Source: Nageia nagi (Eukaryota; Plantae; Pinophyta). Taken from it: DNA of 64,000 nt. Where the stretch lies: assembly GCA_050084985.1 (NCBI GenBank), contig JBITNC010000001.1:189038001-189102000 (forward strand). The letters run 5' to 3'. The notes beneath the pieces were generated by a model. The model ran no database searches, was not told the origin of the DNA, and saw nothing but the letters and a program-made list of their open reading frames with translations. Positions 48,473-61,149 of this stretch are shown here, one piece after another (position 1 is the first letter of the stretch; every line of letters starts with the position of its first letter). Made by a program: the position numbers and the translations under genes.

Positions 48473-50629
48473 CTACTATTCCATATAAAAAATATCATTT
48501 ATCTTTCTTTAGACTATGCACTTCTAGGCTTCTTCCTTTATCTTCATCCTAGTCATTGTTAATATATACTATATAAAATATAGATTGAGTAAAGTAATTT
48601 ATAATACTTTGCAAAAGAATTAACCAAGTAAATCAATCACACATAAGAGAAGAGATAAATATGTAGCAAGGTTCACTTAGGGTAGGCTACATTCATGGAG
48701 AATATTCAATATCTTGAATTAATAAATCTAAACCACTAAAAGTAAATAACCAATAGACAAATTATTGTACCTTCCTCTTTGATTTATAATAATTTCTCAC
48801 CTATAATAATCTCTTAATAAGAATTCACTCTCCTCTTCTTATTACTTACATATAAATAATGAATATACCTATCACAATGCTATCATGCTACTAAATTTCA
48901 TATACATTTATAGATTTATACAATTCCATTTTTGTACTCAACTAGAGTAAATTTATAATTATATAATTTTTTGCCCCATGTAACCTTTAGTTCTTAAGCT
49001 TATCATAGTTAAATACCAAGTTTCATAACCCAAAAATAAGTGCTTGCATCTTTATTTTATTATCAACCATGTTTAGAATGATTGGGTTGTCGATATTGAC
49101 TCACCCAGTTGATGGTAATAAATCGTAGGATTGGTTGGTATACTGGCATGATAAGTATCCTATACAATAATTGGACTTATTGATTGATCCCATACCTATT
49201 GATTGGTATTGAAAATCAATCATGTTCATGTTGACTACCTCCCTTTGATTTGTAAACTCTAGTAGCCTATGGTATTCATGGAATCATCACATCCATATTC
49301 ATTCATTTAATTGTTTATTCACCCTTTGCTCTATAAACTCTAGTAGCCTATTGTATTGATGGAATCATCACATCCATATTCATTCATTTAATTTTTTATT
49401 CATATATTGGTCACTATGTGTGACTTTGTGACTTTATACTCTTAATTATCTAAAATGTAATGATTGATTCTTTAATCTTTTGGAAATACAACATTCATTA
49501 ACATTTAAGATAAGGACATAAATAATGTAGGAATATAGAAATTCAAATTGATATTTTTGCCAAGAAATTAAAATTAATTAGGATTTTGGGTGGGTGTAAG
49601 AAGTTGAGTCCCAATTTGGAGGAACTCAATGTAAGTTAGTTTTTTCTAATACGAGCCTAAGATTCCAATTAGTCTAAGGATATCGACCTTGATCGGGATC
49701 TTGGGACCCAAGATCCCAAAGATCGATATCTCAAGGTTTAGGATCCTAGGGATTGCATATTAACCATCATGGCTTTCCTCCCAAGAAATTACACCTCATT
49801 TTCACCTACACTACAATGACTTCCATAGTTTCATGAGTCACGATCTCGATCCTTGGAGTGTCAGTTTACCCTCCAACTTGTCCCCATTGTGACTGACATC
49901 ATTTTCCCTTAAAGGTATGCCCTAGAATCTCTCACTTGGTTTCTTTTTAGTAAAAAATGGTTATTTTTATTTAGATTAAGGGTTTGGGTAAAAAATGAGT
50001 TTTTTTCTAATTTAGGGGTTTTTTTGGGTCAAAATTAATGTTTTTATTTAAACTAGGGGTTTTAGGGGTTTACTTCCCATAAATGATGATTATTCTTTGG
50101 TTTATTGGGTTTAGATTAATTTAAAAATAATAAATTATGTTATATTATTAATTTTTAAAAAATTAGATATTATATTAGAAATAAAGCTTTTTGATATTGT
50201 ACATGTAACATTATGTGTTATATTTTTCATATGATAATAAATAAGTAACATGCAAACAAAGATCACATTTAACATTCTAAAATATATTTTTATGACCTAA
50301 AAAACTATTAGAGTTCTTTACTAGGATTTGTATGGCTATATAAATTGTTAAAACATTTATGCCATTCTCATACATATGCAAAAATCATTATAACATTTCA
50401 TCATATTAGGTTGAAAAATATTATATATTGAAATTTTAATCTATGGGCTAGATTCACCATGGTTTTCTTAGATTCTTGCAAGAAAGTCAATTGATTTTGG
50501 ACATGTGAAACATAAATAATAATAAATCAAATGATATTTAGTAAATATTAAAACTAATTATAATTATTCAAAAATAACATCCAAATTTAGGAAGTAAAGC
50601 ATAACAAATCAAGAAACTCTCAAGCACTC

Positions 50630-51080
50630 CCTTAGGGGATAGCCTAAGTGGTTTAAGTATTAGATCTCTAAAAGGAGGTCCAAGGTTCAAACCTTTGGGT
50701 TGTGTGTGTATGTGTGTGTGTGTGTGTGTGTGTGTGTGTGTGTGTGTGTGTGTGTGTGTGTGTGTGTGTGTGTGTGTGTGTGGTGTGTGTGTGTGAGAGA
50801 GAGAGAGAGAGAGAGTATGTGTGTGTGTGTGTGATGTAATTATAAAAGGGTGCACACTGTGTGTGTGTGTGTGTGTGTGTGTGTGTGTGTGTGTGTGTGT
50901 GTGGAGAGAGAGAGAGAGAGAGAGAGAGAGAGAGAGAGAGAGAGAGAGAGAGAGTGAGTGAGTGAGTGATGTAATTATAAAAGGGTACACAACCTTGTAG
51001 AACCCCTATAATATAATGTCTAGTAGTCTCATAAACAAAATCCCAAGTAGTGATAATATAAACCAACAATGAAATCAAAA
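50630..51080 (+). mobile_element. tRNA-derived SINE-like element with internal microsatellite expansion
   Basis: Box A TAGCCTAAGTGG (50640-50651) and box B GGTTCAAACC (50684-50693) at tRNA-like spacing. 3' limit uncertain. Confidence 0.5.
50700..50988. repeat. Compound (TG)n(AG)n microsatellite in two higher-order units
   Basis: Two blocks each ending GATGTAATTATAAAAGGGTRCACA. Confidence 0.97.
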
Positions 51081-59470: not shown

Positions 59471-61149
59471 AAAATTAACTTTCAAAATTATTGTAATCAC
59501 AAAAAATTAATGAAAAATAAAAAAAAAGGAGAGAAAATTGTAGAATTAGGTTGCACAATATTGATGGACATAATATAAAATACTTTTATATGAATATTTT
59601 AATTTACATGGGTCAAGATTCTGGGGGTTAGCATCCCTACCCTTGGGATCTTGATACTCAATATCTTGGAGTTTAAATTCAAATTTTCACATGCCTTTTT
59701 TCCTTGGTTCTAAGCTCAAAAATATGTTCAGTGACCTAGTCATTTACTTTGGAACTGCAACTTCAAGGTCCTAATAATGGAAATGGACTTTACCGACTTC
59801 AAGAATGAATTTGATGAGGGTTTTCAAAGAGTTATTTCACAAAATTTTGAAGGATTGTATATGAGAGAGTAGAGATTTCAAATATGGTCTTTGTTTAAAA
59901 ATTGGATTAGATTTAGTTTTTTTAATATAATTTGCAATGAAAGACGGTCCATAAACTTCAAAAAGTAGGGTTTTGTAATTATTTAATTTCTTTTTATTTT
60001 TTGATAATTATGAAAAATAAATATGTCCATATTTTGCATAAAATTCTCTACAACTTAAAAAAAATATAGGTTTAGGTCAAATTATGCTTGAGGGACATGA
60101 GCACTTTTTGAAACAACAATCAGGGCCAATAAAAAATTAATATAAAAAATATTAAAAAAAATTACAAAAATATATCCTCAATAATCTTTAGTGTCTTAGC
60201 TATTAGTATCCAAAAGGATTTAGCAAAATATTAAAATTTAGGTCCAATTATATGTGAGGGACACAATGGGGGTATAGTCCTCAAATTGATTTTTTTAAAG
60301 AATGGATTTTAAACATGTATCTTGAAAATTTATTTCTATTATCTGGGTATGGGAATAAATTACATTTTTTAAAACTATACTTTGAGTACTACATTTTTAT
60401 TAAAGTGACCTTTTTCATGATTTGGACTCTAAGTACTTCAAATTTTGAGATCAAGCATGATAAAACATGAAAATCAAAGAAAACACTTCCACTTTTTGGC
60501 CAAAAGTGGGACTCAACTTTTTGCACTTACCTTTTCTTTTCTCTTAAGTATAAAACTCTTAATATAATATATTCTACTTATTTTCCTCCTAGATTATTTA
60601 TAAAAATGATTTTATATCTTTTATTCTTACTCCTATCCTTCTTGAACTGATGTTTCCCTATTTAACTTCTCATAATGGTTTTTAATGAAATAGACTTGTA
60701 ACAATCAACCTATAGAACTTCTAAAATCATCATCTTCACTTAGTCATCATTATTGAGTCATCATCATCATCATTTTCAAGTTTTAATTTGAGTCATTGAG
60801 TAGGGAAAAATATACCATTAACTATTTCAAGAGCTAACTATTTTAGATCAACTCTTAGACTCACTTAGATGATATTGAACACCTCTTTTCTATAATCCAC
60901 TAAAAAGGTATTGATATAGACATTTTTTATTGATTTAATTTTCTAGATCACACCTCTCAAATCAGAATCATTTGATCCTTGAATGATCTAAAAAATTAGG
61001 GTTTAGGAACCATAACTTGCTATGGAATATTATACCAAGTTGATCTCCATGTTGAATATGTTGGAATCACCCAAGGGTTCCATGGTATCAATCCCCAAGT
61101 CAGCATGCATGTATGGTATAGTATTGCAATGTTATGTATTCCCCCTTTA

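What the first reader, a model, noticed from the sequence alone, without database searches (positions are those of the whole stretch)
49588..60532. Two-gene Sola2-like DNA transposon in a plant genome
Seen: 26 bp TIRs starting GGG, a candidate 4 bp TSD, clean insertion into an LTR, and a transposase with DFxENY-like, SD..Q.KN-like and HGKGxxDG motifs, plus a second convergent gene. Known: Sola2 elements have GRG..CYC termini, 4 bp TSDs and DDD transposases, and were described mostly from animals and protists with the transposase as the defining gene. Inference: this is a land-plant Sola2 lineage with a bipartite, intron-bearing architecture that standard plant TE libraries may miss. The family call comes from remembered motifs, not a search.
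Basis: partly seen in the sequence, partly recalled or inferred. Interest (0 to 1): 0.85.

Follow-up and report, generated by a model that had tools for sequence, protein, structure and literature searches.

The report
Dead Sola2 transposon in a plant
This is a long-dead copy of a Sola2-type cut-and-paste DNA transposon in a plant genome, with one decayed transposase gene and small non-coding relatives nearby. The family call holds, but the claimed second gene and introns do not, and Sola2 is already recorded in land plants.

Summary
The observation largely holds. Window 49588-60532 is one 10.9-kb element with 26-nt terminal inverted repeats (21/26 identical). It sits cleanly inside a ~0.5-kb repeat whose uninterrupted second copy lies at 62729-63242. 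The flanks are TTTT/TTTC, and the empty site reads TTTG.

The transposase (59253 to 57076, minus strand) is one reading frame of 726 codons with 18 in-frame stops, so no introns are needed. It belongs to Sola2. Its pieces match a streptophyte protein family (E 3e-20, 4e-15, 1e-9), which matches Hydra Sola2 proteins (up to 1.6e-30). Its motifs (DFAENY, EIQSxHW, SDDxxHD, SDGCAxQFK, HGKGxxDG) are those of the published Sola2-1_HM core and not those of Sola1 or Sola3. A model of a moss relative shows an integrase-like RNase H core (Z 9-10.5).

The family is high-copy in three related sequenced organisms. It has ~1-kb non-coding derivatives, one of them at 40706-41768. A 4-bp target duplication is supported but not proven.

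Not supported: a second gene (no ORF over 61 aa in the claimed stretch, no Pfam or homologue match, absent from a second autonomous-type copy) and an intron-bearing architecture.

Sola/Sola-2 repeats are already tabulated in moss, fern and conifer genomes. This is a new member of a known kind, of modest interest. The scan had noted possible Sola-like elements elsewhere in this genome.

The parts
49584..49587 (.). left copy of the candidate 4-bp target-site duplication (TTTT)
   Evidence: The empty-site paralog reads TTTG at 63033-63036.
49588..49613 (+). left terminal inverted repeat (GGGTGGGTGTAAGAAGTTGAGTCCCA), 'end B' type
   Evidence: 21/26 identical to the right TIR. The core is unique to the two ends. 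The same terminus is found in the MITE-like copies.
49614..56720 (.). 7.1-kb left arm: AT-rich, no recognisable gene. Holds a (TG)n/(GAGA)n microsatellite at 50701-50966 and tandem duplications at 54308-55811 and 56021-56394.
   Evidence: Longest non-repetitive stop-free stretches are under 93 aa. No Pfam match. No DNA or protein match to L002 or the other loci. Repeats. Only the first ~200 nt resemble the MITE 'end B' arm, and that comparison was by eye.
   Evidence: All three frames are full of stops, longest piece 61 aa. No Pfam match. No homologue for 53344-53526. No usable Atlas hit for 53453-53635, recognition 1205. Not present in L002.
56721..57075 (-). possible 3' end of the transposase pseudogene (one frameshift away from the main frame)
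   Evidence: DNA is collinear with the second autonomous-type copy L002 down to 56724. Only a weak collinear profile hit (E 4.3). BLASTP to P0008 is not significant.
57076..59253 (-). Sola2 transposase pseudogene: one frame, 726 codons, 18 in-frame stops, starting at ATG 59253
   Evidence: Profile hits: 57922-58137 E 2.9e-20, 57664-57846 E 4e-15, 57418-57543 E 1e-9, 58309-58374 E 0.01, all collinear. phmmer found 76 hits at E <= 0.001.
59254..60506 (.). right subterminal region ('end A' arm); 59693-60532 is shared with the ~1-kb non-autonomous copies
   Evidence: 68-75% identity to window 40707-41543 and to L001, L002, L004, L006 and L007.
60507..60532 (-). right terminal inverted repeat
   Evidence: Contigs with unlike flanks begin after 60531, first loose base C.
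60533..60536 (.). right copy of the candidate target-site duplication (TTTC)
40706..41768 (+). 1.06-kb non-autonomous (MITE-like) member of the same family, in opposite orientation; flanks CCTT/ACTT
   Evidence: 79% identical over its full length to metagenome locus L007.
62729..63242 (+). uninterrupted second copy of the host repeat (the 'empty site'); site TTTG at 63033-63036

Best explanation
Window 49588-60532 is one old, inactive autonomous-type copy of a plant Sola2 (DDD) cut-and-paste DNA transposon.

An active relative would work as follows (inferred from the family). The single transposase binds the GGG/GGA...CCC terminal inverted repeats. It cuts the element out and joins it into a staggered 4-bp target, using an integrase-like RNase H core with three aspartates (in DFAENY, SDGC and HGKGxxDG). 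It also moves the ~1-kb non-coding derivatives, which keep only the two arms.

This copy inserted once, into a ~0.5-kb dispersed or LTR-like repeat, and then decayed. It has 18 in-frame stops and at least one frameshift. Two of the three catalytic aspartate positions are lost (SLALSK for DFAENY, WSNNY for WSDGC).

The element carries one gene only. The 7-kb left arm is non-coding filler: microsatellite, tandem duplications and unclassified AT-rich DNA. It was probably gained after or during the family's life and is not a conserved second gene.
For: SHOWN
- TIRs, and a core unique to the two ends.
- A single clean insertion relative to the paralogous empty site.
- One reading frame with 18 stops.
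- Homology: the window pieces match a profile of streptophyte-type proteins at E 2.9e-20, 4e-15 and 1e-9, in collinear order. Those proteins match Hydra vulgaris P0158 at 1.6e-30 to 7e-18.
- P0158 carries the same core as Sola2-1_HM printed in Majorek et al. 2014, supplement file 5. The Sola1-1_AP and Sola3-1_HM cores there are different.
- In 55 relatives F, E, N (DFAENY), Q, E, Q, H384, D415, G416 and K422 are invariant, and D323 and D463 nearly so.
- The AlphaFold model of moss P0093 has pLDDT 86 and pTM 0.80. Its residues 306-515 align to retroviral integrase cores at Z 9-10.5 (rmsd ~3-4 A over 135-159 residues), to Mos1 at Z 8.8 and to IstA at Z 8.8.
- High-copy family: 4,294-12,515 contig pieces at 85-99% likeness in three DNA runs. 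Coverage stops at the TIR.
- Six further copies in metagenome contigs, including two complete ~1.05-1.26-kb non-coding copies and a second dead autonomous-type copy that keeps DFVENY.
- 4-bp flanks match 3/4 in three of four complete copies.
- In a quick tree the window groups inside the plant-type clade. The split from the animal type has SH-aLRT 100, and its own 5-row group 97.
Against: - No intact copy of this particular family was seen, so activity and the DDD chemistry are inferred from relatives.
- No TSD is perfect in any copy, and one complete copy (L007) has unlike flanks (1/4).
- Only one other autonomous-type copy (L002) was available. It lacks its left end, so the normal content of the left arm of the family is unknown.
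- There is no formal tree with Sola1 and Sola3 reference proteins. Discrimination from them rests on published core alignments compared by eye.
- Direct window-to-animal scores are weak (best E 0.0013).
Confidence: 0.85

Rival explanations
1. A two-gene Sola2 element. The left arm (about 53131-54748, plus strand) encodes a spliced accessory protein that is a constant partner of the transposase, as ORF1 is in PIF/Harbinger.
For: The element is unusually long (10.9 kb) for a 2.2-2.5 kb gene. The stretch 53.1-54.1 kb is less low-complexity than its surroundings. The blanks from the protein searches are weak evidence because of the length and word limits.
Against: No stop-free piece over 61 aa in the claimed stretch, and stops in all frames. 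No Pfam match for 10 candidate pieces on both strands. No homologue. No usable Atlas hit, with low recognition. No DNA or translated match in L002, the other loci or the rest of the window. The non-autonomous copies join the two arms directly.
Confidence: 0.06
2. The element was originally a compact ~4-5 kb autonomous Sola2. The extra ~6-7 kb of the left arm consists of later nested insertions of other repeats plus local duplications. This is a refinement of the best explanation, not a contradiction.
For: The arms plus the gene add up to about 4-4.5 kb. The left arm holds a 265-nt microsatellite block and 0.8-kb and 0.25-kb tandem duplications. It shows weak similarity to other repeats of the window. 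It does not recur in L002.
Against: No nested element with its own TIRs or LTRs and TSD could be delimited. L002 is itself truncated on that side, so it cannot show the ancestral state.
Confidence: 0.5
3. The element belongs to another plant TIR superfamily (PIF/Harbinger, hAT, CACTA or Mutator), and the motif resemblance to Sola2 is chance.
For: TIRs starting GGG are also seen in PIF/Tourist-like elements (from general knowledge). The T-rich TSD could be read as 3 bp for this one copy.
Against: No Pfam transposase domain of those superfamilies in the window pieces or in full-length relatives. There is a strong homology chain to Sola2. The excess at the junction is 3-4 nt, not 8-11. A 3-bp reading fails in the other copies.
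Confidence: 0.02

Closest known systems
Sola2 (Sola superfamily; reference Sola2-1_HM of Hydra, group E.12 of the RNase H-like classification of Majorek et al. 2014, PMC3985635)
   Same: Same ordered motifs: DFAENY, QxEIQSxHW, SDDxxHD, SDGCAxQ(F/Y)K, FFxxxHGK..DG. Significant sequence similarity through plant intermediates. An RNase H/integrase-like core with three conserved aspartates. TIRs and short (about 4 bp) target duplications.
   Different: Plant-type clade, well separated from the animal sequences. This copy is dead.
Uncharacterised streptophyte Sola2-type proteins. Named sources: Ceratodon purpureus M758_1G230800 (P0093, moss), a Klebsormidium subtile transcript (P0008), an Adiantum nelumboides fragment (P0062). 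Most of the others are unnamed metagenome proteins.
   Same: The window's core pieces are 33-38% identical to P0093 and up to 42% identical to P0117. Same domain order, including the CxC...C zinc-finger-like motifs before and after the core.
   Different: Those are intact or nearly intact ORFs. The window's family sits in a separate sub-clade with unnamed metagenome proteins (P0011, P0117, P0122, P0124).
'DNA/Sola-2' and 'Sola' repeats tabulated in plant genome papers (Cryptomeria japonica 56.7 Mb, PMC11539532; Ceratopteris richardii 2,739 copies, PMC6890710; Physcomitrella, PMC10741241)
   Same: Same superfamily label in land plants, assigned by standard RepeatModeler/RepeatMasker classification.
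   Different: Those papers give only totals. No element structure, termini, TSD or non-autonomous derivatives are described there. Whether they are the same lineage as this family was not tested.
PIF/Harbinger (the known two-gene plant TIR superfamily)
   Same: TIR element, short TSD, abundant MITE derivatives.
   Different: No DDE_Tnp_4/Plant_tran domain and no Myb-like ORF1. The TSD is not a 3-bp TWA. The transposase is Sola2-type.

Membership tests
Sola2 | Transposase homologous to reference Sola2 transposases (Sola2-1_HM type) | tested here: met
   Window pieces against the plant-type profile: E 2.9e-20, 4e-15, 1e-9. Plant-type proteins against Hydra P0158: 1.6e-30 to 7e-18. P0158 and the plant proteins show the core printed for Sola2-1_HM in PMC3985635 supplement 5. 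The comparison with the printed reference was by eye, not by a tool.
Sola2 | DDD catalytic triad in an RNase H-like fold | tested here: met
   At family level: D323 and D463 nearly invariant and D415 invariant in 55 sequences. They lie at the end of beta-1, at the end of beta-4 and at the start of the following helix in the model. The core aligns to integrases at Z 9-10.5. In the window copy only the third aspartate (HGKGEHDG) survives.
Sola2 | 4-bp target-site duplication | tested here: inconclusive
   4-bp flanks: TTTT/TTTC, CCTT/ACTT and TATT/CATT (3/4 each), and CCTT/AAAT (1/4). The empty-site comparison gives an excess of 3-4 nt. Longer TSDs (8-11 bp) are excluded. No perfect TSD was seen because all copies are old.
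   Bao, Jurka and Kapitonov 2009 is not held, and no held paper states the termini. Observed here: GGG or GGA at 10 of 12 ends, with the first base G in 9 of 12.
Sola2 | Distinct from Sola1 and Sola3 | tested here: met
   The published Sola1-1_AP core (FDLEK..., SDNCGGQNRN, GHT) and Sola3-1_HM core (KDYCQ..., SDNASSY) do not share the window family's motifs. No tree with those references could be built, because they are available only as printed text.
PIF/Harbinger | DDE_Tnp_4/Plant_tran transposase plus a Myb-like second ORF; 3-bp TWA TSD | tested here: not met
   No Pfam match in any piece or relative. No second ORF. The flanks are not TWA.
hAT / Mutator / CACTA | Their Pfam transposase domains and TSDs of 8, 9-11 or 3 bp, with CACTA termini for CACTA | tested here: not met
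   No Pfam match. The junction excess is 3-4 nt. The termini are GGG/GGA.

The most novel reading that the evidence does not exclude
The 7-kb left arm is not junk. It would carry a lineage-specific cargo that is a constant part of the autonomous element in this plant group: an unrecognised spliced accessory gene or a non-coding RNA. That would make it the first two-component Sola2 transposon.
Probability: 0.05. Interest if true: 0.6.

Novelty: new member of a known kind. Interest (0 to 1): 0.3.

Why it matters
Sola2 elements are rarely described in land plants beyond a line in repeat tables, and a 2023 review calls Sola uncommon in flowering plants. This locus and its relatives give a concrete plant Sola2 family: exact termini, a probable 4-bp TSD, ~1-kb MITE-like derivatives, and thousands of contig pieces in related genomes. 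That is useful for curating plant TE libraries and for recognising otherwise 'unknown' TIR elements. It does not change what is known about how such transposons work, and the copy itself is dead.

Tried and rejected
- Pfam on 20 stop-free pieces of the element and on four full-length relatives: nothing significant.
- Rfam and tRNA scans of the whole window: nothing.
- Host identification with a gag ORF (35310-35744): only unnamed hits. The sequencing runs are coded.
- Bao et al. 2009 and Yuan & Wessler 2011 are not held.
- No left ('end B') TIR was found in L002, L004 or L006.
- The C-terminal pieces 57076-57210 and 56721-56951 did not give significant BLASTP matches to P0008.
- Foldseek alone gave no match at E <= 0.001 for the model. 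The re-alignment with VIA-align did.
- A 3-bp TSD reading and a 'GG' (rather than 'GGG') terminus were considered and rejected, because they fit fewer copies.
- LTR features of the host repeat were sought. Only a 10/12 tRNA-iMet PBS-like match at 62764 turned up, and about one such match is expected by chance in the 16 kb scanned.
Pieces were searched apart. For the tree only, the frame was read through inside a script with X at each stop.
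Full report
**What is at the coordinates**

49588-49613 and the reverse complement of 60507-60532 agree at 21 of 26 positions. Their 13-nt core occurs nowhere else in the 64-kb window, against 0.07 matches expected by chance. A longer degenerate pattern finds exactly four sites, the two ends of this element and the two ends of a 1.06-kb element at 40706-41768.

The outer limits are fixed by independent data. When contigs of three DNA runs from related, coded organisms are laid on 57300-60700, thousands of pieces (4,294 to 12,515 per run, 85-99% alike) cover the stretch up to the TIR and almost none lie beyond it. 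After 60531, 47 and 28 contigs in two of the runs run on into mutually unlike sequence, and their first loose base is C. Other copies begin GGG or GGA.

**The insertion site**

The left flank (49246-49587) and right flank (60533-60857) are two halves of a ~0.5-kb repeat. An uninterrupted second copy lies at 62729-63242. With the element left out, the flanks align to that copy in one HSP across the junction (75% over 426 nt). Keeping both flank copies leaves an excess of 3 nt, and removing four leaves a deficit of 1. The flanks read TTTT and TTTC, and the empty site reads TTTG. This is a clean single insertion with a 3-4 nt duplication, in a T-rich context that weakens the evidence. Whether the repeat is an LTR was not settled.

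**The gene**

On the minus strand, one reading frame runs from ATG 59253 to 57076. It has 726 codons and 18 in-frame stops. One more piece (56721-56951) lies a frameshift away.

No introns are needed. The conserved blocks follow each other in one frame in the order CCCxxH (58335), a decayed DFxENY position (SLALSK, 58197), QVTIF...Y, VSDNRLHS (58044), WSNNYT**FKN (57939), HGKGEHDGAGACVKR (57828) and CFCETC...C (57528).

Pfam has no model for it. An exhaustive phmmer search with the 72-residue piece 57922-58137 found 76 proteins at E <= 0.001. Most are short fragments from unnamed plant-like contigs. A few are longer, including a Klebsormidium transcript and an Adiantum protein.

**Why it is Sola2**

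- A search with a longer relative reached a moss protein (Ceratodon purpureus, 774 aa) and, more weakly, uncharacterised proteins of Hydra, Clytia, a catfish, bivalves and insects.
- A profile of the plant-type proteins hits the window's pieces collinearly at E 2.9e-20, 4e-15 and 1e-9.
- The same plant-type proteins match Hydra P0158 at 1.6e-30 to 7e-18.
- P0158 carries almost letter for letter the core that Majorek et al. 2014 print for Sola2-1_HM (DFAENYTFVVQDEIQSYHW ... SDD.THD ... TDGCAGQYKNC ... FFATSHG; PMC3985635 supplement 5).
- The Sola1-1_AP and Sola3-1_HM cores printed in the same file have different motifs.
- In an alignment of 55 relatives the DFAENY, QxEIQ, SDD..H, SDGC..QFK and HGK...DG.G positions are invariant or nearly so. 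D323, D415 and D463 (moss numbering) are the candidate triad.
- An AlphaFold model of the moss protein is confident (pLDDT 86, pTM 0.80). It places those aspartates at the end of beta-1, at the end of beta-4 and at the start of the following helix.
- Residues 306-515 of the model superpose on retroviral integrase cores (Z 9-10.5), Mos1 (Z 8.8) and IstA (Z 8.8).
- A quick tree puts the window sequence inside the plant-type clade. The split from the animal type has SH-aLRT 100. Its own sub-group of five has support 97 and otherwise holds only unnamed metagenome proteins.

**Relatives of the element**

The 1.06-kb element at 40706-41768 consists of the two arms only. About 840 nt of it are 69% identical to 59708-60531, and it also has a short 'end B' arm.

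A scan of metagenome contigs with the TIR core returned six true family members on low-GC, plant-like contigs.
- Two are complete non-coding copies of 1.05-1.26 kb (L001, L007).
- One (L002) is a second autonomous-type copy, collinear with window 56724-60527. It is also dead but keeps DFVENY, EEIQSQYY, SDN and HDKYEHDG.

With termini placed at the conserved GG(G/A), the 4-bp flanks of the four complete copies are TTTT/TTTC, CCTT/ACTT, TATT/CATT and CCTT/AAAT. By my rough estimate, taking about 0.3 as the chance of a match per base in this AT-rich DNA, a 3/4-or-better match has a probability near 0.08 per copy. Three such matches out of four support a 4-bp TSD in old, mutated copies but do not prove it. 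A 3-bp reading fits only the window element.

**The second gene and the introns**

I could not confirm either.
- Ten candidate pieces on both strands have no Pfam match.
- The most protein-like piece has no homologue within the limits of that search. Another has no usable Atlas hit and a low recognition value.
- Nothing from 49589-56720 recurs at DNA or translated level in L002, in the other loci or elsewhere in the window.

The left arm does contain a 265-nt TG/GAGA microsatellite block and two tandem duplications. L002 lacks its left end, so it cannot show what the family's left arm normally holds. The negative result is therefore reasonably good but not final.

**How it most likely works**

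Shown: the element structure, the single insertion, the family membership, the RNase H-type core in relatives, and the existence of many autonomous-type and arm-only copies.

Inferred from what is established for DDE/D transposases and for Sola: an intact family transposase recognises the TIRs and subterminal arms, excises the element and integrates it with a 4-bp staggered cut. It mobilises the arm-only copies in trans.

This copy cannot do so. It has 18 stops, at least one frameshift and substitutions at two of the three catalytic aspartate positions.

**Comparison and novelty**

Sola was described in 2009 with 4-bp TSDs and a DDD transposase. A 2023 review lists it among plant TIR superfamilies, cites Physcomitrella and calls it uncommon in flowering plants (PMC10741241). 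RepeatModeler tables already list DNA/Sola-2 as 0.6% (56.7 Mb) of the Cryptomeria japonica genome (PMC11539532) and Sola as 2,739 copies in Ceratopteris (PMC6890710).

So standard pipelines do label such elements, and a plant Sola2 lineage is not new. What this locus adds is anatomy: termini, a probable TSD, arms and MITE-like derivatives of a high-copy family.

Earlier notes of this scan mention two possible Sola-like non-autonomous elements elsewhere in the same genome. I did not check them.

**Limits**

- The host plant could not be named, because the run names are coded and the gag search returned only unnamed hits.
- The two key Sola papers are not held.
- Reference Sola proteins were available only as printed text, so they were compared by eye and not sent to tools.
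Pieces were searched apart, and the read-through with X at stops was used only inside the tree script.

Noticed in passing
window 27049-37993: LTR retrotransposon on the minus strand. LTR pair 27049-28451 / 36602-37993 (86-92% identical, about 9.55 kb apart). gag ORF at 35310-35744, whose homologues carry PF03732. Protease-like ORF at 33773-34105.
   Followed up: partly
window 16102-16803 and 19116-19818; L002 354-2796: Direct repeats about 3 kb apart (81-85% identical), with internal 115-nt tandem units. A related sequence lies next to the truncated Sola2 copy on metagenome contig L002, so it is another repeat family of the same plant group.
   Followed up: no
window 21985-22893 and 41973-43870: A further pair of dispersed repeats (72-83% identical) about 20 kb apart. 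The right-hand one starts 200 nt after the MITE-like Sola2 copy.
   Followed up: no
P0093 (Ceratodon purpureus), model residues ~600-735: The C-terminal all-beta domain of the plant-type Sola2 transposase gave weak Foldseek hits to BAH domains (AIPP3 7cce_A, polybromo 1w4s, EBS 5z8n_B; probability 0.84-0.96 but E about 0.1). This may be a chromatin-reader-like module. Its presence in the window copy is not established.
   Followed up: partly
window 41574-41695 and 49740-49853: Clusters of the hexamer AGGATC (4 and 3 copies within about 120 nt, against 0.5 per kb in the window) in the 'end B' arms of the MITE-like copy and of the long element. They may be subterminal transposase-binding repeats. 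They are not conserved in L001 or L007.
   Followed up: partly
window 57300-60700 against runs X1, X2, X7: Differences between the window copy and the many related contigs are dominated by transitions. C>T, G>A, T>C and A>G each affect 50-76 places, against 4-44 for each transversion.
   Followed up: no
window 62764-62775: A 10/12 match to the complement of the tRNA-iMet primer-binding site lies at the inner edge of the right-hand copy of the host repeat. This would fit a small minus-strand LTR element spanning 49246-63242. About one such match is expected by chance in the 16 kb scanned.
   Followed up: partly
window 57922-58137 (minus strand): The ESM Atlas feature search placed this piece near clusters in which 38% of members carry Pfam PF25273 (DUF7869). 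hmmscan against the held Pfam copy gave no hit for the piece or for full-length relatives. DUF7869 may be a related transposase-derived domain.
   Followed up: no
window 1575-1928 (minus strand): 117-aa ORF that, by eye, looks like the C-terminal part of a Copia-type integrase or Gag-pol fragment. Not searched.
   Followed up: no
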